A stretch of 64,000 nucleotides of DNA from Ruditapes philippinarum (taxonomy: Eukaryota). Below, piece after piece: positions 2,777-52,610 of this stretch. The position numbers and the translations under genes were made by a program. The stretch is from the NCBI RefSeq assembly GCF_026571515.1, contig NW_026864618.1, forward strand, positions 62,001-126,000, written 5' to 3'. Below the pieces are notes generated by a model. The model saw only the letters and a program-made list of their open reading frames with translations, had not been told where the DNA came from and did no database searches. Numbering within the stretch: the first letter of the stretch is position 1; the number at the start of each line of letters is the position of its first letter.

Positions 2777-4799
2777 GAAAATAGTAAAATAAATCTATAA
2801 GTCGAAACTCAAAAGTGACCCTCCAAGGCTTCCATACTACTCGACAGTCAGATTTATTTGTGTACTACGCTCTGGAGTATTCGGTAATCGACAAAGCTAA
2901 AAATAGCATTTTCATTGATTAAAATGATATTCATGATAATCCGAAGCTTTACGGAAATAGCCGAACATTTTTCATTGGGTAAAAAAGATATTCATCCGCG
3001 AAATTTGTGATTGTAACCTCATATTTCTGTTGACTAATCTAAACTTTTAATGCACTGTAATTCGTTAAATGCCTACATTAAAAATTATTCTTTCTTTTAA
3101 ATTGCTGGTTTTTAAGCAGTTTTGAGTGAGAACTACTTTGCGTTGTTAGGACTGTTAGGAAATTTTGTGTTAGACCGTGGATGTTAGCTATGTATTTACT
3201 GATCTTACGATCAGAAAATACAAAAACCTTCCTTATTGTAATATTCAATGACAAAATTTGTTCAGGCTTATCTTCAACAATGATAATAACCCTGCCCCTC
3301 TCACAAACAAAATGTTTTGTTTAAGTTGTAAAGATCTTTTAGATATTATAAACAATTTTTATTGCTTAAAGGATGACACTGTAAGAATTATCTTACCTGA
3401 TAATTAATTGCAAGGGTTTTTGTCGAAACTCTATACTGATAGGCCCAAAAGATAGTTCAATCTCTAGAATGATTTGAGAATTGTTTGATTGGTTTTAGCG
3501 CAATGCTTTTTTCTTTATCTGCTACCTGTAAGCTTCAAAACAAATAATATAGGTGAATGATAACCATGTTAATTAATCTGGATTTTATTTTTGCATTTTT
3601 AAAGCAAGATACTTTAACAAGTCAAATCAATTGTCGGCGAAAAAGCAAATGCAATTGCCTGGTCCAATTAAATAAGTAGCATGCTGAAGATTAGTTGATA
3701 CAATTACAGTATATTTAAATATCTAAGCAATTTTATAATAACATTTGACAGATGGGTTTTTTATTGTTGTTGTCTTTGTAATACAGTATGCCTAATCATA
3801 CTTCAACTTCTTTAATTTGAAACTGAACGAAGTGTTGACATTGGAAAAATTAACATTCATAACAAAGCAGTTTAATCTAACTATTTATGTAATAATGTTT
3901 TAAGTATATTTTTTAACTAAGACAAATGCATATTAAACACCAAAGTAAATTAGTTGATACAGTACTTCTTATCTTAGATAGCTAAGTAAACTGCGTTATC
4001 TTACGTTAATTCACAAATTAACCGGGTATATAAGATATTTATGTCATTTACAATCAAGGCAGTAAAGGTTACATAAAATCCTCGTGTCTCTGAACACTGT
4101 TGGTAAAAGTGTAAACAATAACAAAGTGATTATAACAGGGAGGCTGCTCACTGTAAAATTGTGCATCATAGAGCCGATACCTATTTCTCACACTATTCAT
4201 AATTTAAAACATCTGTAAGATTTTGAAGATTTTTGAATTATTTTAACTGATCTATCTAAATATGGCGACAATGGATTTCCTTACAACTGACGTCACGTGT
4301 AAAATGACTAAAATAATTCTCCACAAAACTCTTAGGAAAAGAATTGTTAAAACAACATATCTTATCATGATTTTTTATATCTATCTCAAATTAATAATGT
4401 TATGTCCTGCTTATCATTTTGCGAACAGATGCCAAAATGTATAGTCTTTCTTCATAGGTTTTATATTGTTTCAAACATGTTTCTGAGTTCTAAAAGTTAT
4501 ATTCTTTGTGTCCTAAATGTATACCAGGATGTACTTTTGTAAAACAAAAAAATGTGGTTTTCTGATACATGCGTCTAACATAAACGTCATAATTATGTGC
4601 CGGAACACATACAAATCATCGGTTATAATTCATATTAGTAATGATATTTTTACTTTGCGTCAGAATCCTGCTGTAAAACTTCCTATTTACACTAAATTTC
4701 AGTGGCTGCAGGTTTTATGTTTTTGTATACGGATATTAAACTTTCACAAAAATTTCTTTATCTGGCGGCACCTATTCTCTGATATTACTTTATATTTTC

Positions 4800-7700
4800 A
4801 CATAGTTTTACTATGTGAATAAAGCATTACCTCTTGGTCGTTACTATATTACAAACTCTGCAATATTAGCTTTACTCTGTTCATATGTCTTCACTGCGTT
4901 ATTGATAAAACGGGAATTATACTTATTACAGTGATCTTCAGATTTACCTAGCGTTTAAACTTACTTGCACAGAAAGTTTTGGTATTTTTGTTTCCATTTA
5001 AGATTTTTAAATGTTTGTTTTGCTCATGTCTTAAAATTGACTGAAATGGAATTACAAAAAGGAATATATTTTATTTTGCACTTTTTTGGAATTACATTTA
5101 TCAATTGTGAAACAAAAATAGCATCTATTGGATTACTTGATGATGCTCCGAAATATGGGACATATCCACATAAAAGCTCAAATGACCAATATATGGATCC
5201 TTGCAAAGCATGTAAGATTTATTTTTTCATTCTCATATATGTTCTTTTCTTCAAATTTTATGTCGATTTAAGCTGTGTTACAGTTTCGTCCAAATTTTAA
5301 ATGATTACTCTAGACGATTGACAAGTTTGATAAAATGAGTTAGTGTTCAGATAGATATAGGATGTTATTTCATAGAAATTTTTATAATTATTAATATTGC
5401 ATATTCTTTTAATTTGAAAAATGTTCTTTTACATACTATAAAAGAAGAAACTTAAAGTTTTATATTATTTTTATAAGGAAAAGACTTTAAAAAAACTTTA
5501 AAATGCCAAACATTAACATACTAAAATGATATGAAAATTTAAAATGTTGGCCGTTCATGTTGGTCACATTCATACCCATAAACTATTTAAATTTTCGGAT
5601 TTGAATAACAAATAACAGAACATTTCTTCTTTCATTACTAAGCACAATTCTTGAACAACATAAAACTACAAAAAAACGAGAATACAAAGAGAATGCAGGA
5701 AATAGGATATCTGCTTGTTTAGATTTTTGTTCTATTTCACAGATACATTTTAATTGAGTTATACTGATGCAAAAAAAAATGCGTTCTATAAACAAAACCA
5801 AATTAATTCTTTAGTACTAAGTTACACTGATGAGTTACTTTTATGTCTGAACTTCAAATTTTCGTTCATATATTTAGTATTTTTTACGTTTGGTATTTTA
5901 TAATACTTAAATTTATATCTATCAAATTTTATTTTTATCAAACACATTGAGTTCTAGATGAAAGGAATATAAACACGTAACTATTGTATAATTTTTTTTA
6001 ACATCATGAGACAAACGACCGTTTCTTATTAAATAGAAATTAAGTCTATATATATATATATATGTATATAAAAAAAAGGATTGTCAAATCAGTCCCTCTT
6101 TTTAGTCTCCAATAGGGTTTTGGACTGTTAATACTAAGATTATTTTATACAAATGCTGAATACATAAAAAATAGCATGTGACTTCTTTCATTCACTTTCT
6201 TTAAGTTGATTTTACACAATGACATTGTGGATAGAGACATGTTACGAACATTTTGTTTGATTGGTCCAACAAGACAATCCCGCTTAAAATCCTGTATAAG
6301 ATTTTTTTTACATCGAATAAAAAAACAACGTTTAGTTCGTTTGATCGAACAAAATAGGGCCACGAAAGAACACGTTGAACAATAAATTAACAGTTTGTTC
6401 GATCAAAATGCTATACAAAAGCATATTTAATTATATAAGGATCTTGTTGAAACGAATGAAAAAAACAAAAACAAAAAACTGACATATTATCCAATTGATC
6501 GAGCATAAAACGATAAATTACCACTGGAAATTGCACTGGAAATGTTTTGTTTTTGTTTTTGTATCGAACAGAACAAAACTAAAATCATAATAGAACACCT
6601 TGCTTATTTTGTTTCAAAAAGAAACATTTTAAACAAAAAAATGCTAATGTAGAAAATTTGTTTATGTATTATTGTGTTGTTTTTTTTCAAGCATGTATGC
6701 TTTGCACACTTTTGCTAGATGTAAACTTCTTCCAATTTTAGCATACTACTTCTTTGAGATAAACATTTACAGTAAACAAGTACCTTAGTAGAATTTGCTC
6801 TTTGATCGCCAGCCACACGTTAAACAAAATGCATTTTGAGTAAAATTAAAACACCAGATATTCGTGTAATTTTCAGTTAGTGGTATTGACATACAATTAC
6901 AAGACAGTTTCAATTAGAAATAATTTTGATAATAAGTGTCTGGTTTTGATGTTATTTGTTAGGATTACGACAGCAGTCTGTACAAATGATTTTGCTGACG
7001 ATGTTTTTAATTTATCGCTCTAACCACGCCGAGCTTTCAAACTTAGTACTTTATGAATTTTACATCGCAGTTTGTAATAAAAAGAATTGCATTTTTACAT
7101 TTCAGAAAGTTCCTTCCAAAATTCATTTGCTATTTTTACAGCATGTGTTTAAGTTTTTGAAAGACAAACTTTTAGGCTGGTTGTCTTAGTATCTGTTTGC
7201 AATGCAAAATGTCTAGCCTTAAATTGTAAATCATTATTTTATGTAATTTGATTGATTCAAGGAAATATTAATGGACGATTCTCAGGAAAGGATTCTCTGA
7301 AATGCATTATGACCAAAAAAATATTTCACTGAGGGTTTTTGACATGGCATGACTGCTGTCAACAATGTTTCAAGATTATTCTTCCATTTGATGTAGGATG
7401 CACAAATAACTTGTGATCAAAATTTCAAACCATACGCTCACACCTTTTTATAGAATATTTTTCTTATTGTGAAAAATGACCCAAAATTGAAAAGCATTGA
7501 AACGCTTTTCACTAAAATCGGAATAGAACTAGCACAAAGTCCGATTTTATTTCTGATTACATTTATTAATTATCTATTGCATATCATACAATTTTAAACG
7601 TCCTAACTGATCTTTGTAAGAAATTAAATTTTAAGATTTTAGGATTTACGACCTCAGTGGTGTACCTTTGATATCATTAAAAATGAATAAATTTAAAAGC

Positions 7701-7930
7701 ATTACAAAATGTTCCTTGATGTATTGTTTTTTACAACTTATCAACTGTTTTCGTTATTACATTGCAATTTCAACAGTCACATTTTATTGCTAACCTAATT
7801 ATTTTAATTCTGCTGATGCATCATCGAAACAAGAGCAGAACTATCTTTATACAGACACATATAGACAAAGCTTATTAGTTAATTATGATATGAAAACCAT
7901 TGCAAGACAACAAAACGAAATGTGCACGTT
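4800..7930 (+). repeat. Duplication unit A (promoter + exon 1 + 5' intron), paralogous to unit D (about 14890-17200)
   Basis: Colinear shared blocks, e.g. aagcattacctct..gttactata (4822/14907), gaatt(t/c)gct(c/t)tttgatc (6791/16332), catcatc(g/a)aaaca (7819/17094). Confidence 0.8.
5046..5211 (+). CDS. BMP1: BMP1/Tolloid first coding exon, variable copy A (intact): signal peptide + N-terminal propeptide
   Basis: ATG at 5046; MELQKGIYFILHFFGITFINCETKIASIGLLDDAPKYGTYPHKSSNDQYMDPCKA plus 1 nt (T), then donor GTAAGA at 5212. Phase 1 joins exon 2 (52361) to give DPCKA-Y-GFWGDIA, matching the BMP1/TLL prodomain motif DPCKAxxFxGDIA. Use in transcripts is not shown by the sequence. Confidence 0.75.
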
Positions 7931-8891
7931 TGAATAATACAATGCGGATAGGTAACGATACCATGTATCACATTTCCCCTATTCCATTTAACATTATTTT
8001 TCAGCAGGCAATCATCTTTTGAACAGAAGAAATCAGGTGTGTTTGTAGAAAACACAAGCATTTTATGTAATTGTTTTCGCGGAGAATACATCTGCACTTC
8101 CAGATACATATCTGTATTCTGTTAATGACATGAATATCATAAACTGTACTCTAAAACAGACATTTCACATCACACTTGATGATATTGAGACTTTTCATCA
8201 TTAATTACATTTAATGTATAAACACGTTTATTTAGCGCATATCTTTAAGCTTGAACCTGCGATTTTATTGTTTTATAGTTTGCTTCCTGCACATACGGTT
8301 TAGTTCTCAACACAATTGTCTTCATCCATGAAACAGATACACTACTGGTATTCATTTATTTGCCAAACCCTTTGAACAGAAACATTGATGGTAATCAAAT
8401 CGTTGCCTGTCCAGACTTTGCTTAATGTAAATATATTGATATCGAAATGTTAAAGTTCAATAAAATATAGTCGCAGCAATAGATAATTATTAAAGTTGGT
8501 TAATTGGCCTTGTGCTATTTTGTTACAGTTTTGTCAAGCGTTATAAATGTATGCACTTAGCAGACATTATAATATTACATTACCTATAGATGTTTATAGC
8601 TGTCTATATTAATTAATGATTATCAATAAGGTTAATTCTATATTATCTGCATTTGACTTCGTGTTAATTATCCTATCTAATTTTACACGCGTTCACAATG
8701 TGCATATTGTATCGTAAGGACATTCTTTCAGATGATTGATAAAGAAACAACCCTCCTCAGTGGTATTGTTTAACCATATTACAGTTAATATTCACTAAAG
8801 TGAGGATTATAAAGTGCCTTATTTATAGTATTCAGCAATTTGCTACAGTTTTGTGTAATAATTAGTAAATTTTATTTTCATTTGGATAAAC

Positions 8892-9063
8892 ATGAATATA
8901 ATTACATTGTCAGGTGTAATTTTTCAATCGTTTATGTTTTCAATAATTAAAAGTGATGTAGATATAAAACCCGCTTCTGTAGGATTAATTGAAGAAGCAA
9001 CACGATATGGAACCTATCCGCATAAAATCTCAGATGATTACTACATGGATCCATGCAAAGCTT
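8892..9063 (+). CDS. BMP1: BMP1/Tolloid first coding exon, variable copy B (intact, divergent signal peptide)
   Basis: MNIITLSGVIFQSFMFSIIKSDVDIKPASVGLIEEATRYGTYPHKISDDYYMDPCKA plus T, then consensus donor GTAAGT at 9064; phase 1, compatible with exon 2. Confidence 0.75.
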
Positions 9064-10910
9064 GTAAGTCAATTGATATTATGTATTATTTCATGTTATA
9101 TAAGCAATATTCTCTATATATGTGGTATTTCAAAGCATTATACACGTATATTTTAAGTATTACAAATATATATATAATTTTGCAAATCACTGAGAAGGCT
9201 TGATTGTGATACAATGTATTTACAATCATGTATTTATAATATTAATTTTAACTTGTGTAGAATAAAAAAATGTGTGACTTTTGTGTTGTATTGAAGTAGC
9301 ATAAAACACTTGAAACAAACTTTTAGATCTATTAACAATTCATTTCAATCCCAATTCTTAAATAAACAGACAACTGGAATTTCATGTTGCAAAGATAATG
9401 CATAACGACATAGTGTTTTTCTTTCAAAATATATTAAATCAAACACTCTCTATCTGTTGAAAAAGACTTTTTACCCTCAACATTCTGATTTTATGAATAA
9501 AATTACATATTGTTGACTGAAAATATTTTAAAAGAAATCTGATTTAATTCTTACAATCGTTTTCTATCACCTATAATTATCATTCATATCTACCCGGATT
9601 TCCGTCCACTTTAATCATCATTCGCGAGAAACCCGTGCATGTTAGAAATAGCACACACGTAGCAAATAACAAATATTTCTACGATGAAACCTGCAAACAG
9701 TATTTACTGACAGCTTCGTGTCAGCTCCAATTTGAGTAAATTTTAGTTAAAGGAGTCTGACGTTAACTCTTTTTTTGTGAATCCATGCTGAATGTTACAG
9801 GAAACATTTCTTATATCTGACAATAAATCGGGCCACGTTCGAAAAGTTTTTATCGGATGGTTGTACTTTAATAGAAAATTGTTATACAAAGAAACTGTTG
9901 TCGTTTCAATTCAGCCTTACCTTAAAACTCCAGCGTTAGATAATTAAAAAAAACACACACACAATTTTGATAAATCATCAAATCAAGTGTCTTAATATCT
10001 TTTGGTGGTTAGTTGAATTTATACACATATATACTTCTCTATACAAACGCTTTGATTTTATTACTATTTTGCAAGTGTTAACGATTTACTAGTCGTTTTC
10101 ATAATGAAATAATGTTTATGTTGTTTACACGATATTAACTTAAGGAGGAAAATAAAACTTTGAAATGTTGATATTACGTAATAATAAATGAAATATTGAT
10201 AGGCGTCAGTGCTCTCGATTGTCGAAGCAAAATATTAAAAAAGTAAATACTGCTTGGGGGTAAATTTCATTAGAGACATTACATGGGAAGTTAACAGTTT
10301 TGCATCAACGTATACTTTACAGCAGTACACGAAGATATTTAAAATATCCATGGCTCTGTTAAAGAATAAGATAGGTTAAATACTATAAGAGTGTACTTAA
10401 GCCTCATTAAAAATCCCATCAAAAGTTAGAGATATAATATCAAATCTAGTATAAATTATCTCATGTTCCGTTCCGAAGAGTCCCCTAATAACTTCTCTCT
10501 TTTATTATGACAATATGCAAGTTCACTATGTGATAAATTCTGATGAATAGGTCATGTTCAATTTTGTTACAGTTTAGTCAAGCGTTATACATTCTGCACG
10601 CAACTTACATTGTAAATGGCATTGCCTATATATTTTTATAGATGTTTTTAGTAATTAATGATTATCAATAAGGTTAATAGAATATTATCTTCAGTTGATT
10701 TAAAGTAATCTATTTTTAATTATTTTACACGCATTCACAATGTGCATGTTGTACTGTAAGGACGTTCTTTGAGATGACTGATAAAGAAGCAACCCTCCTC
10801 AATGGTATTGTTTAACCATATCTATAGTTTGCGGTATGCATATCGGTGCAAATTTATTTAGGGCCATACTTATTTTTTTTTAACTATTTGATACAGTTTG
10901 ATATAATATC

Positions 10911-11082
10911 ATGAATGTTATAACAATAACATTTGTACTTTTCCAATCGTTTATGGTTTCATGTATTAAATGTGATGTGAATATAAAACCCGCTACTGAA
11001 GGCTTAGTTGAAGGAGCACCACAATATGATACTTATCAGTCAAAAGTTCGAGATGATTACTGCATGGATCCATGGAAAGCTT
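10911..11082 (+). CDS. First-exon copy C (duplicate of B; frame open but DPCKA changed to DPWKA and donor weakened); functional or incipient pseudo-exon
   Basis: Hand translation from ATG 10911: MNVITITFVLFQSFMVSCIKCDVNIKPATEGLVEGAPQYDTYQSKVRDDYCMDPWKA plus T; donor reads GTTAAG at 11083 (one extra T relative to GTAAGT in B). Too short for the ORF track. Confidence 0.5.
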
Positions 11083-11435
11083 GTTAAGTCAAATGATATA
11101 ATTGATTATTTCAGGTTTCTCATAAAGCAATTTTCAATATATTTATCACATTTTATATTCAATATGCGGAACACGAAAATGTTATATGTATCTTTTTTGT
11201 AAAATCAATGAAAAGCTTGTATTTACTTGTGGTACCTGTCGGTAATATTTTGACACTCGTGCAAAAATTGTTGTGGTCGGTATTATTGTGTGTTGAAGTA
11301 AAATTAGAAATAAAATTTTATTAAGAATCCAATACGATCCCTGTCGTCCAGAACAGCTGGACCTTGTTGCTGAAAGTTGATATATAACAACGTACAGTGT
11401 TTTTCTTTCAAAATATATTAAAATCAAACGCTCTC

Positions 11436-11936
11436 CAATCTGATTAAAATCAGCTCCTAATTCTCCTTATTGATGCTACGCATTAATTAGCTGAAAACAC
11501 CATTAGGAGGTCATCTTTTCGTGATCTTTTTAACAGCCAATCGTCCGCTAACTTTCACAATTTTTTTAGGCGATGCGATTTCTAATGTAACCGCTGGAAA
11601 ACCAATCCTGAGTAGGTAATTTTCACGATTTCGAGAACAAAACATGGCGTTGTCCATAAAACAGGCAGGTAAACTGGCAAAACAAGAATTGAGTCTATTA
11701 TTTCCAGTTTATTCGTTTCAAATTACCTTAAACATTTTTTTTTCTAACAAAAATACACTATTTATTTTACTTCCACGGACACTGATATTTTGATACTTCG
11801 TCTAAGGACGATTTAATTGCATGGCTTACAATAGCTTTCTTAGGAATCCAAATCACAATGAAGGCGAAGCAAATAAGGTGGCAATCAGATCTACATGCAG
11901 AAATAACTTTAAGAGATCTGTACTTTTGTCAGATTG
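11436..11936. mobile_element. MITE-like non-autonomous DNA transposon (about 500 bp) with imperfect TIRs and a ~10 bp TSD
   Basis: Begins caatctgattaaaatcagctc and ends gagatctgtacttttgtcagattg; flanked by aaacgctctc (11426-11435) and aaactctctc (11937-11946); the paralogous site in unit B (9441-9450) is empty with a single aaacactctc. Confidence 0.75.
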
Positions 11937-12948
11937 AAACTCTCTCGTTCTGTTGACAAAGATTTTTACTGTTACCATTCTGATTTTATGACATATGGAA
12001 ATATTTCAAACTAAATAAGTATCGTTTTCTATCACCTATAATTATCGTTCATAGTTCCCCGGAATTCCGTCCACTTTGATCATCATTCACAATAAATTCG
12101 TACATGTTAGAAATAGGAAACACGTAGAATATAACAAAGATTTCTACGATGAAACCTGAAAACAGCATTTTCTGACAGCTCCGTGTCAGCTCCAATTAGA
12201 GTACAATTTAGTTAAAAGAGTCTGACTTTTACTCATTTATTGTGAATCCATGCTGAATGTTACAGGAAACATTTCTTATATCTGACAATAAATCGGGTCA
12301 CGTTCGAAAAGTTTTTATCGGATGATTGTTCTTTAATAGATAATTTCTATACAAAGAAACTGTTGTCGTTTCAGTTCGGCCTTAAATTAAAACTCTAACG
12401 TTAGATAATTAAAAAACTACACACAATTCTGATAAATCATCAACTCAAGTGTTTTAATTTCTTTTGGTGGTTAGTTGAATTTATATACATATAGACTTCT
12501 CTATAAACACACTTTGATTTTATTACTACTTTGCAAGTATTTACGATTTACTCGTCGTTTTCATAATAAAACAATGTTTATGTTGTTTACACGATATTAA
12601 CTTAAGGGGAAAAATAAAACTTTGAAATGTTGATATTATGTAATAATTAATGAAATATTGATAGGCGTCAATCCTCTTGATTGTCTTAGCAAAATGTAAA
12701 AAAGTGCGTGGGTTGAAAGTTCATCAGAGACATAACATGAGAAGTTAACAGTTTTACAACAACGTATCCGTTACAGTAATACACTCGTCTAGGGTCAGTA
12801 AATTTCGTTATACCAATTTATTTAATGAATTTAAATGCCTCCAGATTTACAATGATGCAAATTATAAGAAACTCCTGATAATGAAAAATCTGTTGTTCAA
12901 TAATAAATGATTTTACTACCTAGCTGTAAATAATACCAACCACGTATT

Positions 12949-12997
12949 ACTTTCAGCCACTGAGATTTATTCACTTTCAGCCACTGAGATTTATTCA
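12949..12997. repeat. 24 bp direct tandem duplication
   Basis: actttcagccactgagatttattc occurs twice in tandem, in the spacer of the large inverted repeat. Confidence 0.9.
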
Positions 12998-13329
12998 GAA
13001 GTAGGCAGTGTCACTTAAAGAACTAAAAAATCATTGTTGCAATCTATTTTTTATTATAAATTAAAAATATATATTTCTTTTACATTAGCCAATATTTTTG
13101 AGATATGCCGACACGTAAATGAATTGATAACATGAATATCAGACGTATTTATATAATAACAAACTATTTCTTTTACAAAAATATATCCTGGTGTGAATCT
13201 AGGACACAAAGAAGAACATTAACACTACTAAAAAAAAATGATTGTAACATCATAAATGCTACAAGATATGTTATCAATATTGGTAACATTTCTCGAAATA
13301 ATCATCAGGATATAACAAAAAATATATGT

Positions 13330-14379
13330 AAGATAAACATTTTCAAAGTTTTATTTTTCTACTTCAGTTTATATTATGTAAACCACATAAGCATTAGTTT
13401 ATCATGAATGCGGCGAGTAAATCGTAAACGCTTGCAAAACCCCCCAAAGTAATCAAAGTTATATGTATATTCAGAGAAGTCTATAAATATTTTTTTTTTA
13501 ATTTCTGAGTAAAAGAAAATTATAACACTTGAGTTGAATTGTATGTAGGTTTTTTAATTACTTCTCGTGGGATTTTAAGGTAAAGTTGAAATTAAACGGC
13601 AACATTTTTTTTGTATAACAATTTTACTGTTAAAGTACAATCATCCGATAATTACTTTCTGTATGTGACCCGATTTATTTTTTGACGTAAGAAACGTTTC
13701 TTGTAACATTCAGCAAACATTGACAATACAAGAGTAAACGCCAGACTCTTTTAACTAAAATTTACTCTAATTGGAGCTGACACGAAGCTGTAAGTTTTAT
13801 ATTCTTTACAGGTTTCATCGTAGAAATATTTGTTATATTCTCCGTGTGTGCTATTTCTAACATGCACGAGTTTCTTGTGAATGATGATTAAAGTGGACAG
13901 AAATCCGGGTAGATATGAATGATAATTTTGAGGTGATAGTAAACGATAGTTACTTCGTTTGAAATATTTCCAGTTATCATCAAATTAGAATCGTAGCAGT
14001 AAAAATCATTGACAACAGATAAGGAGCGTTTCAGTCTGACAAAAGTACAGATCTCTTTAGTTATTTCTTGCATGTAGATCTGATTGCCACCGTATTTGTT
14101 TCGCCTTCATTGTGATTTGGATTTCCCGAGAAAGCTATTTTTAGCCATGCAATCGTCCCTTACAGATAGGCATTAGACGAAGTATCAAACTATCGGTGTC
14201 CGTGAAAGTAAAACAAATTGTGTATTTTTGTTAGAAAAAAAAATTGTTTGTAGTTACAGTGTATTTGAAACAAACTGGAAATAATACACTCAATTCTGAA
14301 TGGGCAAGATCGTTTTGCCAGTTTACCTGCCTGTTATATTGACAACGCCATGTTTTGTTCTCACAAATCGTGAAAATTA
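13330..14379 (-). repeat. Inverted duplicate of about 11617-12640 (1 kb arms, ~0.7 kb spacer)
   Basis: Reverse-complement matches throughout, e.g. ggtggcaatcagatctacatgca (11877) vs tgcatgtagatctgattgccacc (14069); acaggcaggtaaactggcaaaac (11661) vs gttttgccagtttacctgcctgt (14312). Confidence 0.92.
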
Positions 14380-14845
14380 AAGTTATCAGGGGACTCTTCG
14401 AAACGGGACTTGAAATAGTTTTAGAATATTTGACATTTAATCTGTAACTATTGATGATATTTTTCAATGAGGCTTACGTATGTACTGTAATAGTATTTAA
14501 CTTTTCTTATTATTAACCTCGTCATGAATATTGAAAATACTTGACACTGTGTAAAATTTGAAAAATTAAACTCAATCTTTTCATAAGTAGAATTAATAAT
14601 ATATTCCAAAGTAAAAGACTTAGCCCGAGTCTCCGTAATATGTACGCTTTTAATATTTGCCTCATTCATTATCTTAATATAAACGAATTTGCGACATAAA
14701 TATGAAAGGTAATACTAAGTAAGACGCAGTGGACAAAAAGAACATTCATAATGGAACTGTTATCATTTTATTACCCGCTCGTGCAGCAAATGTCGTCTGA
14801 TTCAACTGCATACAGATATTTATCAATAAGTTCATTATCGTCTGC

Positions 14846-14936
14846 GCGTGACGTCGGGATCACTTCACTCTTTTATTACTACAATATACTTGTTCACTAT
14901 GTGATGAAGCATTACCTCTAGATCGTTACTATATAA
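14846..14936 (+). promoter_or_regulatory. Putative core promoter of copy D: CRE/ATF-like site + TATA box
   Basis: gcgTGACGTCg at 14849 and TATATAA at 14930 (81 nt spacing versus 87 nt in J), about 200 nt before the ATG. Confidence 0.55.
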
Positions 14937-15136
14937 CAAACTCTGCAATACTTGCTTTAATCACTTTATATTACTTTACTGCGTTATTGATAAAACGGTG
15001 TTTAAACTCTGCAGTGATCTTCAGGTTTTACAAAGCGTATAACTGGTTAGTGCATGCTTAACATGAATGTGAGCTTATTTTGTTTGATTTAAGATAGTTA
15101 AATATAAGGATATCTTAAGTTTTAAAATTAATTGAA

Positions 15137-15302
15137 ATGGAATTACAAAAGGGATTATATTTAATTTTGCAATTGTTTGGGATTACATTTATCAACTGTG
15201 AAACAAAGATAGCATCTACTGGATTAATTGAAGATGCACCGAAATATGGGACATATCCACATAAAAGCTCAAATGACCAATACATGGATCCTTGCAAAGC
15301 AT
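15137..15302 (+). CDS. BMP1: BMP1/Tolloid first coding exon, variable copy D (intact; sister of A)
   Basis: MELQKGLYLILQLFGITFINCETKIASTGLIEDAPKYGTYPHKSSNDQYMDPCKA plus T, donor GTAAGA at 15303, phase 1; upstream TGACGTC (14849) and TATATAA (14930). Confidence 0.78.
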
Positions 15303-21300: not shown

Positions 21301-23655
21301 CCATCTCTTTACATTCCAAACACCACCTGTTCATGAAGCAAATGTTGATTTTTTTGTATCATTTATCATTTAATAACACTCAAAATAGGGGATCAAATAA
21401 TTGATATAATTGATACTTGAAAGAGTTGTATGTACGGTCGATCTTTACTCGTTTAATAGTCAAAATTGAATTGATAATGTTCTAAAGAAATCTTAACATC
21501 ACACATAATTAATAGTCGTCATATTTTTCTATTTGATTTTAAAAGTCTTTTTTTTTCATTCATTTAAGTTGTGCCGTAACTGTTGGTCATTATACCATAT
21601 GATTATAATGTGTATCAAAAATATATGCTGTAGGTGGAGTTTAATACGAAATTAGTTTGTTTTAACAATAAATATGGAGTACACATTTCGCCAAATATTT
21701 GCCAAGTATCTGAGAGATATAAATTGTTTAAAATGCCTTTGCCACTAATGTCACTCAAAGCATACAATACTCTCCCATAGCAAGACTCTTGTCACAAATG
21801 CCAACCCAAACATATGAAACACTTCCATGACCAGATTGCAAACAACAGAGTTCCTTTTTTACCTCATGTATTCTAGTTTTTCACTGATTCTGATTGTTGA
21901 AGTGGAAGCTCAAAAAACAAAAATATAGAAAATAACTAGTCAGTAGAATAAACAGTGCCTTGTGGCTGTAATTTGGTATAAACGGTATACATGTCCTGTG
22001 TGTATGTCTTTTTAGGAGTTTTTATAATTCTTATAACAATTATGCACTTTTAAAATTCTGAGACAAAAGAATAAAAAAAAGAAAAAGAAAGAAAACAAGG
22101 AATCAAGAAATAAGGATAATGATAGGATTAAGAATAAAAAAAGCAATAATAAGTAAATGAGGTAGAAAACTAACTGAAAATGAACTATGAGGTTTAAAAG
22201 ACATAGAATCATATATATCTGCATTAAACGGACTACTCAAAAGCTCATTTATGGCAATTGATTAAAAAAGATAAGTGTAACAATTGTGCCAAATAAGACA
22301 TGTTACGGGGTCTGCATCAAATAATGTAACAAACAAAACGTAGAAATAAAATAGCAATAGTTGTAAAGAGCGTGTTTTATTGAAAACAAACTAGCAGAAA
22401 GCACTGATCTACCTTGCACGTGATCAATCAAAGAGTAATAACGAACATATTCAGCTGTAGATTTTATATTAAAACTATTACACAATGTTTACGTGCACTG
22501 ATGAACGAGGTATGTTGATTAATTATATAATCTCTTTACAATACTCGTAAAATATATTTTTGCAATCTTATTGACAGCAACAAAATCAATAATAATATTA
22601 TCATTGTTAATGGAAGGTAAATCAATAGTCACATATATATACAAACACGTTTTCGTACTAAGACTTTCTATTTAACAGTTGTTTAACAACAAATAATAAA
22701 TTTCTTACCGTTCTCCGGAGGGTCTTAACCTTTACGATGACCTTGTTATTTTATTTATTTATTTATTTTTTGCTCTAAAAGACTCGACTATCTATCTCGA
22801 GGGTATTTGTTTACAGTTGTATCGAGGTTTTGCGCGACTTTCCGCTAAACAGTTACCCGAGAGCTAGAGATCCCCGTGATTCTTTTTCTTGCATAATACA
22901 CATTAATCATATTTCGGAAAGAAATAACAAAAACTAATATTTTCATTTAGCACCTTTTTATTATATAACCGTTTACGTATGAATTTACAACCACTCATTA
23001 TCGAAGAATGACGTAAAATTATTCATAAAATGCGCGTGGGAATGACGATTTTTAAAGCATGCAACTTGCCTTACACTAGGTGTGTAAGACAGGTTTTTTT
23101 CTAGCACCGGTGTAAACAGTTGATAATCCTGTCTTGTGTACAAGAACAATTCAAATATATTTAGCATCACTGTGATTGATGATGTTTACAGTATAAAGCA
23201 TATCAATAATATATAATATGCACGCCTCTATTTCATCCTACTGAAAATTATTAAATGAGAAACATCTGTTTTACATATATCTTTATTACTTCTTATAAAA
23301 GCACCTGACACAATGTGAATTTTTAAATCTGAGGCGTCACTGCTATTATTATGCCCAAGACATTATCTGCATAATGCTTTCACAAAAGATTGGACAAACA
23401 ACACGCCTTAAATGTGAACTTGACACGCCTTTATTTCCCACTTTGCTATTAAATGAGAAACATCTTTTACAGACTCTTTCATCAAATAAGACGCAATATG
23501 AATTATATAATCAGAGACGTCATAAGAATTTCCCGACAAATGATTTAACAAAGGTTTGGAATAACGACACTCATAACAAATCAAAATTCATACTATCATT
23601 TATTATTCATTTATATAAAGTTCGTTTTAATGATGACTGATTCGGTTATTAATTG

Positions 23656-23706
23656 TCCACATTAAACCTCCTCAAATGACCAATATCCTTGCAAAGCACG
23701 TAAGAT
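23656..23706 (+). pseudogene. First-exon relic E (3' fragment only)
   Basis: tccacattaaacctcctcaaatgaccaatatccttgcaaagcacgtaagat aligns to the end of copies A/D (tccacataaaagctcaaatgaccaatatatggatccttgcaaagcatgtaagat) with small indels; ATG and signal-peptide part are deleted, GTAAG donor retained. Confidence 0.75.
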
Positions 23707-25029: not shown

Positions 25030-25335
25030 GTTTTAGGCAAATTTTATAACGTTTTAATAGTAGTTTTAGCGCATGTTAGATACTTTTCACCTGAAGATCG
25101 TAACGATAAATGTGAAATAGTTTTTTTATAAGCTACTGTAGCAAACTGTAAACAAAGTAGTATTTTGACTTCATACAAAATACTTATTCGATTGCCAAAC
25201 AGCAACAGATGAAAAAGATTGTTCAGGTACTTGGCAAATGAGTAACATTTTGGAAATTATAACAGAACACCAAACATAAACAACTTTTGAGAAATAAAAA
25301 TAAAAGCATTTCTGAAGTAAAATTGGCCTTTAGGC
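25030..25335 (+). mobile_element. Dispersed MITE-like repeat family copy
   Basis: Shares aatgagtaac..tttgagaaataaaa..agcatttct with 57500-57600 and is reverse-complementary to 44617-44780. Confidence 0.65.
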
Positions 25336-27650: not shown

Positions 27651-27812
27651 ATGGAATTACAAAAAGAATATGTTCTATTGTTGTGCGTTTTACTGCATAT
27701 ATTTTACAGTTTGTCTCTATTTATTGTGGACTGAAAACATCATCTCGTTATTCTTAAACAAGTATATGCAAGTATGATAATCATTATTTATTAAACGATC
27801 GTCCATGAAAAA
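27651..27812 (+). pseudogene. First-exon relic F (highly diverged)
   Basis: Starts gaaATGGAATTACAAAAAG as in A/D (MELQKEYVLLLCVLLHIFYSLSLFIVD then stop); a ccatgaaaaagtaag remnant lies about one exon length downstream; homologous promoter module upstream (TGACGTC 27325, TATATAA 27393). Confidence 0.6.
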
Positions 27813-31187: not shown

Positions 31188-31354
31188 ATAGAATAACAAA
31201 AAAGAATACATATCATTTTGCATTTGATAGCAATAACTTTTTCTAAACTGTGATTCCAAAAACTGATATGTTGGATTTAATGAGGATGCACCTAAATTTG
31301 AAACTTATATGCAAAAGCTATCAAATGATGAATATATAAATCCATGCAAAGCAT
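31188..31354 (+). pseudogene. First-exon relic G (full length, inactivated)
   Basis: ATG changed to ATA, in-frame stops, a +1 frameshift and no GT donor; 3' part still reads VGFNEDAPKFETYMQKLSNDEYINPCKA. Confidence 0.85.
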
Positions 31355-34374: not shown

Positions 34375-34530
34375 ATGGAATTACGAAAAGAACATTTTCT
34401 ATTGTTTTGCGTTTTGTTGCATCTATTTTATTGTTGGCCTCTATTTTATGTAGACTTAGAGTTACATCTTTTCTTAAGTCTTAAACAATAATTCTGTATG
34501 ATAATCATTGTTTACCCAACGGTCGTCTTT
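34375..34530 (+). pseudogene. First-exon relic H (duplicate of F)
   Basis: ATG 34375: MELRKEHFLLFCVLLHLFYCWPLFYVDLELHLFLSLKQ then stop at 34489-34491; upstream flank nearly identical to that of F; no DPCKA or donor. Confidence 0.6.
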
Positions 34531-36894: not shown

Positions 36895-37061
36895 ATACAA
36901 TAACAAAAAGGAATAAATATCATTTTGCATTTGATTGCAATAACTTTTTATAAACTGTGATTCCAAAAACTGATATATTGGATTTAATGTAGATGCACCT
37001 AAATATGGAACTTATATGCAAAAAAACTCAAGTGAAGAATATATAAATCCATGCAAAGCAT
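36895..37061 (+). pseudogene. First-exon relic I (duplicate of G, inactivated)
   Basis: Shares the ATG-to-ATA change, stops and frameshift of G; 3' part reads IGFNVDAPKYGTYMQKNSSEEYINPCKA; donor lost (gcattctag). Confidence 0.85.
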
Positions 37062-47426: not shown

Positions 47427-47592
47427 ATGGAGCTTCGGACAGGGATTTATTTCATTTTACAATGTTTTGGAATTTCTGTTATTAATTGTAATATTAAACC
47501 TGCTACCGTTGGATTAATTGAAAATGCACCGAAATATGGGGCATATCCATATAAAAGCTCGAATGACAAATACATGGATCCTTGTAAAGCAT
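47427..47592 (+). CDS. BMP1: BMP1/Tolloid first coding exon, proximal copy J (intact)
   Basis: Hand translation: MELRTGIYFILQCFGISVINCNIKPATVGLIENAPKYGAYPYKSSNDKYMDPCKA plus T, donor GTAAGT at 47593; nearest copy to exon 2; absent from the ORF track because a stop follows within the intron. Confidence 0.9.
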
Positions 47593-48712: not shown

Positions 48713-51700
48713 TCTTTAAAATCAGAAGCGCTAGAAGTTTTCATGACAATTTTTAAGAAGAAAAAACATATTTTGTTGGTGTTGTTGTTGTTGAATTATT
48801 TTTTCAGAGCGTTACGACAGTCTATCCCCTTCCAAAAATAATTTGTACTAACGTACTTATGTACGCCACTACACCATTTCAAAATATAGTATTTTCTTAA
48901 GTGTTCACAACTTTGACATGAAGATATTGCAAGTTAAATTGCTTTGCTGGTACTAAAATTGGGGGAGAAAAAAAACTTGCGTAAAAATTCTACTAGATCC
49001 TATCTGTACGAAAATGATGTTACGAGATCATAATCTTTACGGCCTATGAAAATTTCTGATCAGTATCTTTATTATCTTTTACACTGTTAACCAACCGGTG
49101 TACATTGTTGTGAAAGAAAGAAAAGTGTGCAAAGTACATTGCGTAGAAGAAGAAAAAAGACCCTTTTAATGTACCGGTATACTAAAATCAGGTCGTGTGG
49201 TTTGGTTTTCTAGTGCATATAGAGTAACAATACTTTCGTTTACATTGATGTAAGTGATGAACGATTTGTCCTTGTCTTTAAAAGTTTCAGCATGATATCT
49301 TATATTAATTAATGAACTGAGAGCTTTTTGTTACTTATCGTTTTAGAAAACCTTTAATATAGTTAACTATTTTGTTAACACACCGACTGGCCGTGATTGT
49401 ATTTCAACGCTTACCCGCTCTCCACAAGCAGATATCGACTTATCCACTTGAAATGTTCAAGAGTGGAAAAGAGCGGTACAAATCAAAATATTTTTTATTC
49501 CATTATTTCAACCGCAGCGCAAAAAAGCAAACCATAAGCAAGCGCTCTTTTTGTCGAAACGTGTTCAATGAGCCTGAAGCAGAAGTTGCACGGAATTCTC
49601 GTGTAGATTGTTCGATTTGATATTTCCCTAGATGAGCTCAAGTATACCCCAAGAATAGAATCATATCATTTTTCACTGCTTTTCTCATTAAACCGAGTGA
49701 CCCGTAACAAATTTACTTGGATGAAACTATCGTACCTTTATGAACTATCTGAAATTTGATAAAAAAAAAACTCAATATTATTCCAAAGACTTCTGTGTTT
49801 ATTCCGCATAGACATGCATTCGTCATATCAGGTTATTCAATTAAGCAATTATACAATGTTCCGACGTTATCATTCTAAATAATTCTCATTTCGTATAAAA
49901 CATACCGATTGACGTTTTACATCCATTAATTTTTCTCTCTCTCTCTCTTATTTTTTTTCATTTTGTTAGATTGATCGACAGCTAAACATTTATCAATCAA
50001 ATGATAAACTGTCTATTCCACGGAGATTTTACATCATCGTAACAAGAAGAGATTAGTTTAACATCAGGTTGTTATGGGAGGGATTCATCTTCTAGATTTT
50101 GAAAAGTTTATGTACACGTGTTTTATTGACTAGTTTCTTAGAATATAAAACAAAAACTTTCTGCAGTAAACTTGACGTAACTGGAGATCGAACTTACAGA
50201 ACCCATCTTAATTAAAACAGCAATTATTTAAAGGCGGTATGGACAATGTTTAATTCTTGACTGTGACAGAATATATACATTTTGAAATTAAATATGGTGC
50301 ACGAAGTTCATTTTATTGCTTTTGCATTTATATGTAATTGTAGAATTCTACATTTTGCCTGTGACATTTAACTTTATTCCAGTAGTGAAATAAGTTTGTA
50401 AAAAAATATAAGAAATAGGTACGTGAAAAAATATGTTTTTTATGTACTAGTAGTATCGCACATGAGTTAGCATATAATGAAAATTATACCGTGGAAAAAA
50501 TTGTTATAAAGCGAGCCTCTGGTCAGTTATTCACATGACGTCATTTGGTCAGCTGAGTAGTGTTAAACTTATTTGAATAACTATCAGGCAACGCAAGGGG
50601 TCAGGAAAGGAGCAGAAAAACATGTAAATGTACAAGTATATCAAAATAGCTAGTGAACTTAAATAAACCGCCATTACAACATTTATCTCCCTAATATTTT
50701 AAATTTAAAATATCAAAAAATGGAATAGATACTTTAAAGCAGTTCTACTTTTACGTGCTTCACGTGCACAACGGTAAATGAAGATGACTGAACGATGTTA
50801 TTTATATGCTATTTAAACGTAATTGCATTACAGTATGCTTTCTGGAAGGATAAATATCAAATATATCGTATTCACCTTATTGCGATGCAAACACAGTGTT
50901 GCATGTGGGAAAAACCTGCAGACGCTCACTGGGTTTGATCATTATTCTGTAATGGTAACATTTAGAATTAAAATAAGCCGCAGTAAATAGCATGATGTCT
51001 TAATAAACGCTCGTCTCATTTCAAAGTGGCAAATGAACTGTGAATAAACGAGAGAAAATATCTCGTCTGCGTGGTAGGTTTTTTTGCCACTCGTTTGTTT
51101 GTTTACTTCCTTGATAGTATAACATGAGACAACCTTTTTTTAATTATCGTTCTTAAACGATCTCAGGTTTTTGATAATTATGCTCTTTTCATCTATGTGT
51201 AAAGTTTCCATTAGTGTTTCTTATGGTATCACACTACTAAATAAAACTATTAAATTACTTACGTGCTTTATTAGGAATGTGAAATCTAAAAATGATCAAA
51301 GCATCATATTAAAACTTTTCATTTTAGAAACTAAGTGTGTGTGTGTAATGTTGTTGTTGTTATTTTGTGTGTGATTTTTTTTGAAGTTTAATTTACAAAA
51401 GGTTTTAAGGTAATTGTCTTTGAACAAAGAAAATACATAAATGCTTTTTTTAATTTGCAAAAGGGCTTTAGGTAATTGTTTTTCAACAATGAAAATACAC
51501 AAATGCATTCACAGTACATGTTTTTTTACAAACCATTCAGTATGAATGTAGAAAAAAGTTATTTCATTCACTCAAAAGGATTTTTCATACTATATTTTGG
51601 CGAATAACAACAGTGATATGTAGAACGGACAACATTAAAAAATACATTTTACATTTTGCTGGAGAGTTCTTAGTAAAATATCATTGCAGTGCTTTTGCTA

Positions 51701-52360: not shown

Positions 52361-52610
52361 ATGGATTCTGGGGAGATATTGCCATGTCGGAGGAAGAATA
52401 TAATACATTTAAAAATCAAGAATATTTAGAAGAAAAGATGGAAACATCTATTTATGATCTTCAAATTGAAGACCCCTTAACTATGTATGGTGGGGGAAAG
52501 GGGCCATATTCCCATTTAGACAAAGAAAAAGAAGAAAAAGAAAAGAAGATGAGTAAAAATCACAAAGATAACAAGAAAAAGAAGAAAACAAGAAAAAGAT
52601 GTAGTAAAGG
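52361..52610 (+). CDS. BMP1: BMP1/Tolloid exon 2 (prodomain with FWGDIA motif, acidic then Lys-rich)
   Basis: Acceptor ttttcAG ending 52360; (Y)GFWGDIAMSEEEYNTFKNQEYLEEK...KKKKKTRKRCSK(G); donor GTATGC at 52611, phase 2. Confidence 0.92.

What the first reader, a model, noticed from the sequence alone, without database searches (positions are those of the whole stretch)
5046..15302. Distal exon copies A and D look conserved by selection
Hand alignment of A (5046-5211) and D (15137-15302) gives 13 substitutions in 166 nt and no indels: 6 synonymous and 7 mostly conservative replacements, with the last 22 codons (DAPKYGTYPHKSSNDQYMDPCKA) identical in protein. The flanking UTR and intron of the same duplication units are visibly more diverged and full of indels. 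An exon conserved more than its flanks 37-47 kb from exon 2 argues that these copies are used. Exon-limited gene conversion is the alternative explanation.
Basis: seen in the sequence. Interest (0 to 1): 0.8.

Follow-up and report, generated by a model that had tools for sequence, protein, structure and literature searches.

The report
Clam tolloid gene's alternative first exons
Two look-alike exons 37 and 47 kb upstream of a tolloid/BMP1 protease gene are working alternative first exons kept intact by natural selection; this is a tidy but ordinary case of one gene with several promoters.

Summary
A (5046-5211) and D (15137-15302) differ at 13 of 166 bases with no indel, 6 synonymous and 7 replacement changes. 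Homologous flanks differ at 29-31% and carry 12 indel events.

Both are copies of exon 1 (signal peptide plus start of the prodomain, ending DPCKA|GT) of a canonical tolloid/BMP1 gene. Its exon 2 starts at 52361. The array has at least 12 copies; Z1, A, B, D and J are intact, and Z1 lies upstream of the window.

Selection explains the pattern:
- Replacement changes are about five-fold too few (7 against about 38 expected, P=5e-10).
- Synonymous changes are not significantly too few (6 against 9-10 expected).
- Differences fall 2:1:10 by codon position, against 6:5:5 in the decayed pair G/I.
- The codon model gives omega 0.18 (P=8e-8 against 1).
- I found no conversion-tract signal.

Use is shown for A. 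Contigs from two independent studies begin near 4824, run to 5211 and continue with the first 30 bases of exon 2, a 47 kb splice. D is supported only indirectly, by RNA reads with D-specific letters.

No paper describing this was found. Earlier notes of this scan report similar first-exon arrays elsewhere in this genome.

The parts
4807..4909 (+). Conserved island at the transcript start of unit A (core promoter and first ~85 nt of the 5' UTR)
   Evidence: 86% identical to 14893-14994 of unit D, against 31% mismatch in other flanks (p=0.001). Also conserved in Z1, G and I. RNA contigs begin at 4824 and 4827.
4824..5211 (+). First exon A: 5' UTR 4824-5045 and coding part 5046-5211 (55 codons + 1 nt; signal peptide and start of prodomain); donor GTAAGA at 5212
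   Evidence: A 2514-nt contig in X5 and a 350-nt contig in X1 cover it. The loose end behind 5211 equals exon 2. ORF and donor.
8892..9063 (+). First exon B (B-type, 57 codons + 1 nt, two extra codons, MNIITLSG... start, intact, donor GTAAGT)
   Evidence: Exon-limited low read depth in RNA run X23 (6.3 against 0.14 and 0.9 in neighbouring bins). Its allele seen in X23 matches protein P0003.
10911..11082 (+). Exon copy C (B-type): open frame, but the invariant Cys is replaced by Trp and the donor is weakened to GTTAAG; probably dying
14893..14994 (+). Start-site island of unit D
15137..15302 (+). Coding part of first exon D (55 codons + 1 nt; donor GTAAGA at 15303)
   Evidence: RNA reads of X23 laid on A carry D-specific letters at 5064, 5105 and 5117.
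23655..23698 (+). Fragment of an exon-1 copy (3' end only)
27651..27744 (+). Decayed exon-1 copy F (keeps MELQK start only)
31188..31354 (+). Decayed exon-1 copy G (ATG lost, frameshift, stops)
34375..34410 (+). Decayed exon-1 copy H (paralogue of F)
36899..37061 (+). Decayed exon-1 copy I (paralogue of G), used as the neutral control
47427..47592 (+). Proximal intact first exon J (coding part; donor GTAAGT)
52361..52610 (+). Shared exon 2 (prodomain, GFWGDIAMSEEEY...). The start is fixed by RNA; the end is predicted from the G|GTATGC donor
   Evidence: for the start; unique in the genome; sequence.
54692..55056 (+). Predicted exon 3: Lys/Arg/Glu-rich prodomain, RTKR cleavage site, start of mature protease ([19 protein letters not shown])
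   Evidence: Boundaries come from the sequence only.
57707..57865 (+). Open frame holding an astacin-domain exon
   Evidence: Pfam Astacin E=2.6e-7.
58062..58310 (+). Open frame holding the zinc-site exon ([19 protein letters not shown])
   Evidence: Pfam Astacin 3.6e-28. Best solved relatives are TLL1 at 3.7e-34 and BMP1 at 8.7e-33.
60650..60973 (+). Open frame holding the last astacin-domain exon
   Evidence: Pfam Astacin 1.6e-22.
63202..63561 (+). Open frame holding the first half of CUB1
   Evidence: Pfam CUB 5.7e-10. The remaining CUB and EGF exons lie downstream of the window (L014).

Best explanation
A and D are two of at least five intact, tandemly duplicated alternative first exons of one canonical tolloid/BMP1-type metalloprotease gene. 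Each unit carries its own transcription start about 220 nt upstream of its ATG. Each encodes its own signal peptide plus the first ~34 residues of the prodomain, and each has a phase-1 GT donor that splices to the single shared exon 2, across 47 kb for A and 37 kb for D. Signal peptide and prodomain are removed from the mature enzyme. The copies therefore mainly supply alternative promoters, while each must still encode a working secretion signal and the conserved prodomain start (...APKYGTYPHKSSNDQYMDPCKA). That requirement is the purifying selection keeping the exons at 92% identity while neutral flanks have drifted to about 70%. Shown here: the anatomy, the selection signature, and the transcription and splicing of A. 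Inferred: splicing of D, the role of the promoters, and the signal-peptide function.
For: Gene identity: astacin exons, closest solved relatives TLL1 and BMP1, and the order CUB1-CUB2-EGF-CUB3-EGF-CUB4-CUB5.
Array.
Exon against flank: 7.8% against 29-31% mismatch, p<1e-9.
Neutral expectation from the flank substitution spectrum: 9.1-9.8 synonymous expected against 6 observed (P=0.15-0.20); 38.5 replacement expected against 7 observed (P=5e-10).
Nei-Gojobori dN/dS for A-D is 0.25 (p=0.021), and 0.17-0.36 for all pairs of Z1, A, D and J.
ML codon model: omega 0.18, LRT 28.75, p=8e-8.
Codon positions of A-D differences are 2:1:10 (p=0.0036). The decayed pair G/I gives 6:5:5, with exon identity equal to its flanks.
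RNA: the X5 contig of 2514 nt (depth 86) and an X1 contig cover 4824/4827 to 5211 and continue as ATGGATTCTGGGGAGATATTGCCATGTCGG. That 30-mer matches the window only at 52361, and exon 2 is single-copy in the genome.
D: in X23 most reads over the exon carry D-only letters (5064T in 8/8, 5105C in 10/11, 5117G in 9/12).
The same prodomain motif is conserved in exon-1 ORFs of other organisms.
Against: Splicing of D to exon 2 was not seen directly. D-type reads were detected only by laying them on A at 90% likeness in one run, at about 10 reads against a background of about 1. No D-type contig was laid in X1, X3 or X5.
Synonymous divergence (dS 0.22) is nominally lower than flank divergence (K about 0.40), though not significantly. 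An old conversion followed by selection therefore cannot be excluded.
High identity extends about 20-30 nt beyond the coding part on both sides.
The signal peptide is judged only from hydrophobicity, not from a dedicated predictor.
Confidence: 0.78

Rival explanations
1. Gene conversion and selection both act. An A-D conversion covering roughly 5026-5240, some time after the duplication, reset the exon's divergence. Purifying selection has shaped the changes since then.
For: dS in the exon (0.22) is about half the flank distance (0.40). Identity stays high for about 20 nt upstream of the ATG and about 30 nt into the intron. In X23 the D-type reads carry T at the position matching 5168, the letter of copy Z1, which could be a trace of exchange between copies.
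Against: The synonymous deficit is not significant (P=0.15-0.20). The run test finds no tract for any pair (p>=0.29). The exon tree ((A,D),Z1,J) agrees with the flanks, where only A and D share intron homology. The start-site island is conserved separately, across a 63% trough, so two tracts would be needed. The ratio of A-D distance to Z1 distance is about the same in the island (0.47) and the exon (0.44), my arithmetic from the identities.
Confidence: 0.14
2. Exon-limited gene conversion alone. D (or A) is an unused relic kept similar to a used copy by repeated conversion, without selection on it.
For: D's splicing to exon 2 was not shown directly.
Against: Conversion erases synonymous and replacement differences alike, yet the 13 differences are strongly skewed: positions 2:1:10, dN/dS 0.25. 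Polarised with Z1 and J (my reading), the A branch has 3 replacement and 2 synonymous changes and the D branch 3 and 4, so neither branch looks unconstrained. Decayed copies G and I in the same array were not rescued. D-type reads are present in RNA.
Confidence: 0.05
3. The exon segment is a younger, patchy duplication. The exon looks conserved only because it was copied more recently than the surrounding sequence and has not had time to decay.
For: The array is a mosaic of duplications of different ages, including an inverted copy just upstream of D.
Against: Youth does not explain the skew by codon position or omega of 0.18-0.25. A is transcribed and spliced.
Confidence: 0.03

Closest known systems
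Variable first-exon arrays (clustered protocadherins, UGT1A)
   Same: A tandem row of homologous first exons, each with its own start site and donor, each spliced to one shared set of downstream exons. The array is built by tandem duplication with birth and death of copies.
   Different: In those arrays (from my own knowledge) the variable exon encodes the functional, diversity-bearing domain. Here it encodes only a signal peptide and about 34 prodomain residues that are cut off the mature enzyme, so the diversity is chiefly in promoters.
Alternative leader exons of secreted-factor genes (IGF1 exons 1 and 2; BDNF 5' exons), from my own knowledge
   Same: Several promoters, each with its own leader exon, give the same mature secreted protein with different signal or pro-peptide N-termini.
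   Different: Those leader exons are not recent tandem paralogues of each other. Here the leaders are clear duplicates (92% to 47% protein identity) with decayed siblings alongside.
BMP1/mTLD/TLL and Drosophila tolloid/tolkin
   Same: Astacin protease followed by CUB1-CUB2-EGF-CUB3-EGF-CUB4-CUB5. The prodomain has ...DPCKA followed by an FxGD-type motif and a dibasic cleavage site before AAT(A/S)RPER.
   Different: Known isoform diversity of vertebrate BMP1 is at the 3' end (from my own knowledge). I found no paper describing a first-exon array for any tolloid.
Other first-exon arrays noted by this scan in the same genome (CCK-type receptor, neuroligin)
   Same: The same genome and the same layout of tandem alternative first exons (s1-803704, s1-813803). 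These are AI notes that I did not check.
   Different: Those vary part of the mature protein; this one does not.

Membership tests
Alternative first-exon array | Two or more homologous first exons in tandem upstream of a single shared exon 2 | tested here: met
   At least 12 copies between contig positions 50.7 and 109.6 kb. Exon 2 is single-copy in the genome.
Alternative first-exon array | Each usable copy has an ATG, an open frame and a donor in the same phase | tested here: met
   Z1, A, B, D and J all end ...DPCKA + T|GTAAG in phase 1. C is doubtful. F, G, H, I and Z2 are broken.
Alternative first-exon array | Own transcription start for each copy | tested here: inconclusive
   A: RNA contigs begin at 4824 and 4827 in two studies. 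D: only the conserved start-site island. Contig ends are not exact start sites.
Alternative first-exon array | RNA joins each first exon to the shared exon 2 | tested here: inconclusive
   Met for A (X1 and X5). D and B have exon-matching reads only, with no junction shown. J was not tested.
Protocadherin/UGT1A-type variable-exon system | The variable exon encodes the domain that differs functionally in the mature protein | tested here: not met
   The exon encodes a signal peptide and the prodomain start, upstream of the RTKR site.
BMP1/tolloid subfamily of astacins | Astacin catalytic domain with the HExxHxxGFxHExxRxDRD zinc site, closest to BMP1/TLL | tested here: met
   Pfam Astacin on three exons. 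TLL1 scores 3.7e-34 and BMP1 8.7e-33, against meprin at 1e-17.
BMP1/tolloid subfamily of astacins | C-terminal CUB1-CUB2-EGF-CUB3-EGF-CUB4-CUB5 | tested here: met
   CUB1 lies in the window. The rest lies in order in L014, downstream of the window.
Gene-conversion tract | Synonymous and replacement differences reduced alike within the tract | tested here: not met
   Synonymous 6 against 9-10 expected (not significant); replacement 7 against about 38 expected (P=5e-10). Codon positions 2:1:10.
Gene-conversion tract | A significantly long run of shared variable sites (Sawyer-type test), or a tree that conflicts with the flanks | tested here: not met
   Permutation p=0.82 for A-D. The grouping ((A,D),Z1) is the same in exon and flanks.

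The most novel reading that the evidence does not exclude
The array is a promoter-choice system. Each intact leader exon (Z1, A, B, D, J) drives the same tolloid enzyme in a different tissue, stage or condition, and the small differences in signal peptide and prodomain start additionally tune secretion or zymogen latency. The hint is that sample X5 shows only A (depth 86) while X23 shows mostly D-type reads.
Probability: 0.3. Interest if true: 0.45.

Novelty: new member of a known kind. Interest (0 to 1): 0.35.

Why it matters
Tolloid/BMP1 proteases control BMP signalling and matrix maturation. Here regulatory complexity of such a gene has been built by duplicating the promoter together with its leader exon, rather than the whole gene. 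The locus also carries its own neutral control, the decayed sister copies, which cleanly separates selection from gene conversion. Together with the other first-exon arrays noted in this genome, it suggests that tandem first-exon duplication is a common route to alternative promoters in this bivalve. It does not change how tolloids or alternative promoters are understood.

Tried and rejected
- Gene conversion: tested through the synonymous expectation, codon positions, a run test and tree congruence. No signal was found.
- Profile search of the exon-1 peptides against 1.84 billion representatives: it returned only short genomic ORFs that read through the donor. No full-length annotated isoform appeared.
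- Word search with the D ORF: it found an allele of A (P0012) and copies from other organisms, but no spliced form.
- Metagenome pattern scan: one marine contig (L013) with a single diverged exon-1 copy, no flank homology and no exon 2 within 5 kb. No orthologous array was available for comparison.
- De Bruijn-style reasoning from X1 contig depths (20, 64.5, about 164) as evidence for D: rejected, because no D-type contig was laid over the diagnostic positions in X1.
I stopped that step and took coordinates from open-frame tables instead. An earlier script had held two typed peptides and ran.
- I built no joined spliced protein model, so no full-length search or fold was run.
- The species name (Manila clam) comes only from earlier scan notes and was not verified.
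Full report
**What is there**

The window (30% G+C; contig C13105:62001-126000 of a 1.4 Gb animal genome) holds the 5' part of one gene on the + strand. Open frames at 57.7, 58.1 and 60.7 kb match Pfam Astacin. The zinc-site exon is closest to solved TLL1 (3.7e-34) and BMP1 (8.7e-33), far ahead of meprins. A CUB half-domain follows at 63.2 kb. Just downstream of the window lie CUB2, EGF, CUB3, EGF, CUB4 and CUB5 exons, in that order. The gene is therefore a canonical tolloid.

Exon 3 (predicted 54692-55056) ends the prodomain with RTKR, followed by [19 protein letters not shown]. Exon 2 begins at 52361 behind ttttcag and encodes GFWGDIAMSEEEY....

**The array**

It comprises an ATG, a hydrophobic leader and about 34 prodomain residues ending ...YMDPCKA. 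One further base follows, then a GT donor, which fits the two-base start of exon 2.

BLAST and nhmmer find copies at these positions:

| Copy | Start in window | State |
|---|---|---|
| A | 5046 | intact |
| B | 8892 | intact |
| C | 10911 | open, but Cys to Trp and donor GTTAAG |
| D | 15137 | intact |
| fragment | 23655 | 3' end only |
| F | 27651 | decayed |
| G | 31188 | decayed |
| H | 34375 | decayed |
| I | 36899 | decayed |
| J | 47427 | intact |

Two more copies lie upstream of the window. Z1 is intact at contig 50678-50843, and Z2 is a B-type copy with a stop, near contig 53915. G, I, F, H and Z2 have lost the ATG or carry stops or frameshifts.

**The observation**

It holds exactly: 13 substitutions in 166 nt and no indel, 6 synonymous and 7 replacement. 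All replacements are conservative. Four lie in the hydrophobic leader and three just behind it. The identical C-terminal stretch is 23 codons.

The identity profile along the A and D units is as follows:

| Region (relative to A) | Identity |
|---|---|
| 4810-4909 | 86-87% |
| 4910-5045 | 63% |
| exon | 92% |
| first 30 intron bases | 83% |
| next ~220 intron bases | near background |
| intron blocks further down | 69-72% |

Pooled homologous flank blocks have 237 mismatches in 818 positions and 12 gap events. Against the exon this gives p=6.5e-10, or 5.7e-11 without the island.

**Selection or conversion**

I used the substitution spectrum of the flanks as the neutral expectation for the exon.
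- Expected synonymous differences are 9.1-9.8; 6 are observed (P=0.15-0.20).
- Expected replacement differences are about 38.5; 7 are observed (P=5e-10).

The exon's excess identity is thus almost entirely missing replacement changes. Purifying selection on the protein predicts this. Conversion does not, because it erases both classes alike.

Further results point the same way:
- Nei-Gojobori dN/dS is 0.25 for A-D (p=0.021) and 0.17-0.36 for all pairs among Z1, A, D and J.
- A Goldman-Yang model on these four gives omega 0.18 and kappa 1.5, with LRT 28.75 against omega=1 (p=8e-8) and tree ((A,D),Z1,J).
- A-D differences fall 2:1:10 on codon positions (p=0.0036).
- In the decayed pair G/I they fall 6:5:5, and that exon (90.4%) is no better conserved than its flanks (90-95%). 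This is a control from within the locus.
- A Sawyer-type run test finds no tract for any pair.
- Only A and D share intron homology, which matches the exon tree.
- Polarising the 13 changes with Z1 and J (my reading) gives 3 replacement and 2 synonymous changes on the A branch and 3 and 4 on the D branch, with one ambiguous. Neither branch looks unconstrained.

An older conversion followed by selection cannot be excluded, because dS (0.22) is nominally below the flank distance (0.40).

**Use in RNA**

Fourteen RNA-like runs hold 33-69% of the sampled words of 4807-5240, and six unclassified runs hold 58-76%.

I laid four runs on 4000-9400.
- In X5 a 2514-nt contig (depth 86) matches 4824-5211 with 7 differences.
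- That contig then continues with ATGGATTCTGGGGAGATATTGCCATGTCGG.
- X1, from another study, has a contig covering 4827-5177 and a separate contig with the same loose end behind 5211.
- That 30-mer occurs once in the window, at 52361, and exon 2 is single-copy in the genome.

Exon A is therefore transcribed from about 4824 and spliced across 47.1 kb to exon 2. The conserved island is the start of this transcript.

For D the evidence is indirect.
- In the raw RNA reads of X23, most reads lying on exon A carry letters unique to D (5064T in 8 of 8, 5105C in 10 of 11, 5117G in 9 of 12). They also carry the letters D shares with Z1 and J.
- Depth is about 10 against a background of about 1.
- No junction was seen for D, and X1, X3 and X5 showed no D-type contig.

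B has exon-limited depth in X23, in an allele that matches protein P0003.

X5 shows A only and X23 mostly D. This hints at differential promoter use but does not prove it.

Alleles of A seen in three runs differ from the reference at six or more places in the 222-nt UTR. They differ at two places in the 166-nt coding part: K36R, and the synonymous 5192. P0012, an A allele from another sample, is identical in all 55 residues while its intron differs.

**Wider conservation**

Short genomic ORFs from other assemblies and one marine metagenome contig carry diverged copies of this exon. They share VGLxExAPxYGTYPHKxSxDxYMDPCKA and the same donor. The constraint on the last 23 codons is therefore a general property of this prodomain start and is not special to A and D.

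**Mechanism**

Each unit combines a promoter with a leader exon. Signal peptide and prodomain are removed, so the mature enzyme is the same whichever unit fires. The array provides alternative promoters, and selection keeps each used leader able to direct secretion and to supply the conserved prodomain start.

Homology between A and the other units stops about 17 nt upstream of A's start site, whereas D, Z1, G and I share upstream sequence with one another. This fits divergent regulation. These last points are inference.

**Comparison, novelty and limits**

The layout is that of variable first-exon arrays, and functionally it resembles genes with alternative leader exons. I found no paper on a tolloid first-exon array. 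Earlier notes of this scan report similar arrays in other genes of this genome and name it the Manila clam. I did not check those notes or verify the species.

The single read-laying run could not cover D itself.

Noticed in passing
G000:C13105:50678-50843 and about 53915-54015 (11.3 and 8.1 kb upstream of the window start): Two more exon-1 copies. Z1 is intact (MEYQKWLY...DPCKA|GTAAGA), 63.5 kb from exon 2. Z2 is a B-type copy with an early stop. The A-type then B-type pairing (Z1-Z2, A-B) suggests a two-exon duplication unit.
   Followed up: partly
window 7457-7522: A ~65-nt element with RNA depth in the hundreds to thousands in all four runs, on both strands. Reads are 90-95% alike and run on into many different sequences, so it is a dispersed repeat present in many transcripts.
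   Followed up: no
window 13325-14379 against 11617-12638 and 9553-10180: The intron segment downstream of B and C is present again, inverted (79% identity), just upstream of unit D. The array is a mosaic that includes an inversion.
   Followed up: no
window 8502-9119 against 10546-11142, and 9441-10330 against 11937-12784: In the B/C pair the exon region (74%) is less conserved than the intron behind it (85%). C has lost the invariant Cys (DPWKA) and has a weak donor (GTTAAG), so C seems to be decaying while B stays intact.
   Followed up: partly
window 52520-52610 and 54700-54930: The prodomain exons 2 and 3 carry long Lys/Arg/Glu-rich low-complexity stretches (KEKEEKEKK..., [31 protein letters not shown]...). 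This is an unusually long charged prodomain for a tolloid.
   Followed up: no
window 5152, 5192; 9001, 9004: Coding polymorphisms seen in RNA runs. A has K36R in X5. The synonymous 5192 is T or C, and the reference T is the derived state. B has a T->I plus R->Q allele in X23 that matches metagenome protein P0003.
   Followed up: partly
window 25042-25313 against 57286-57579: A 270-290 nt repeat (71%) is shared between the decayed part of the array and an intron of the protease region. It is probably a transposon fragment.
   Followed up: no
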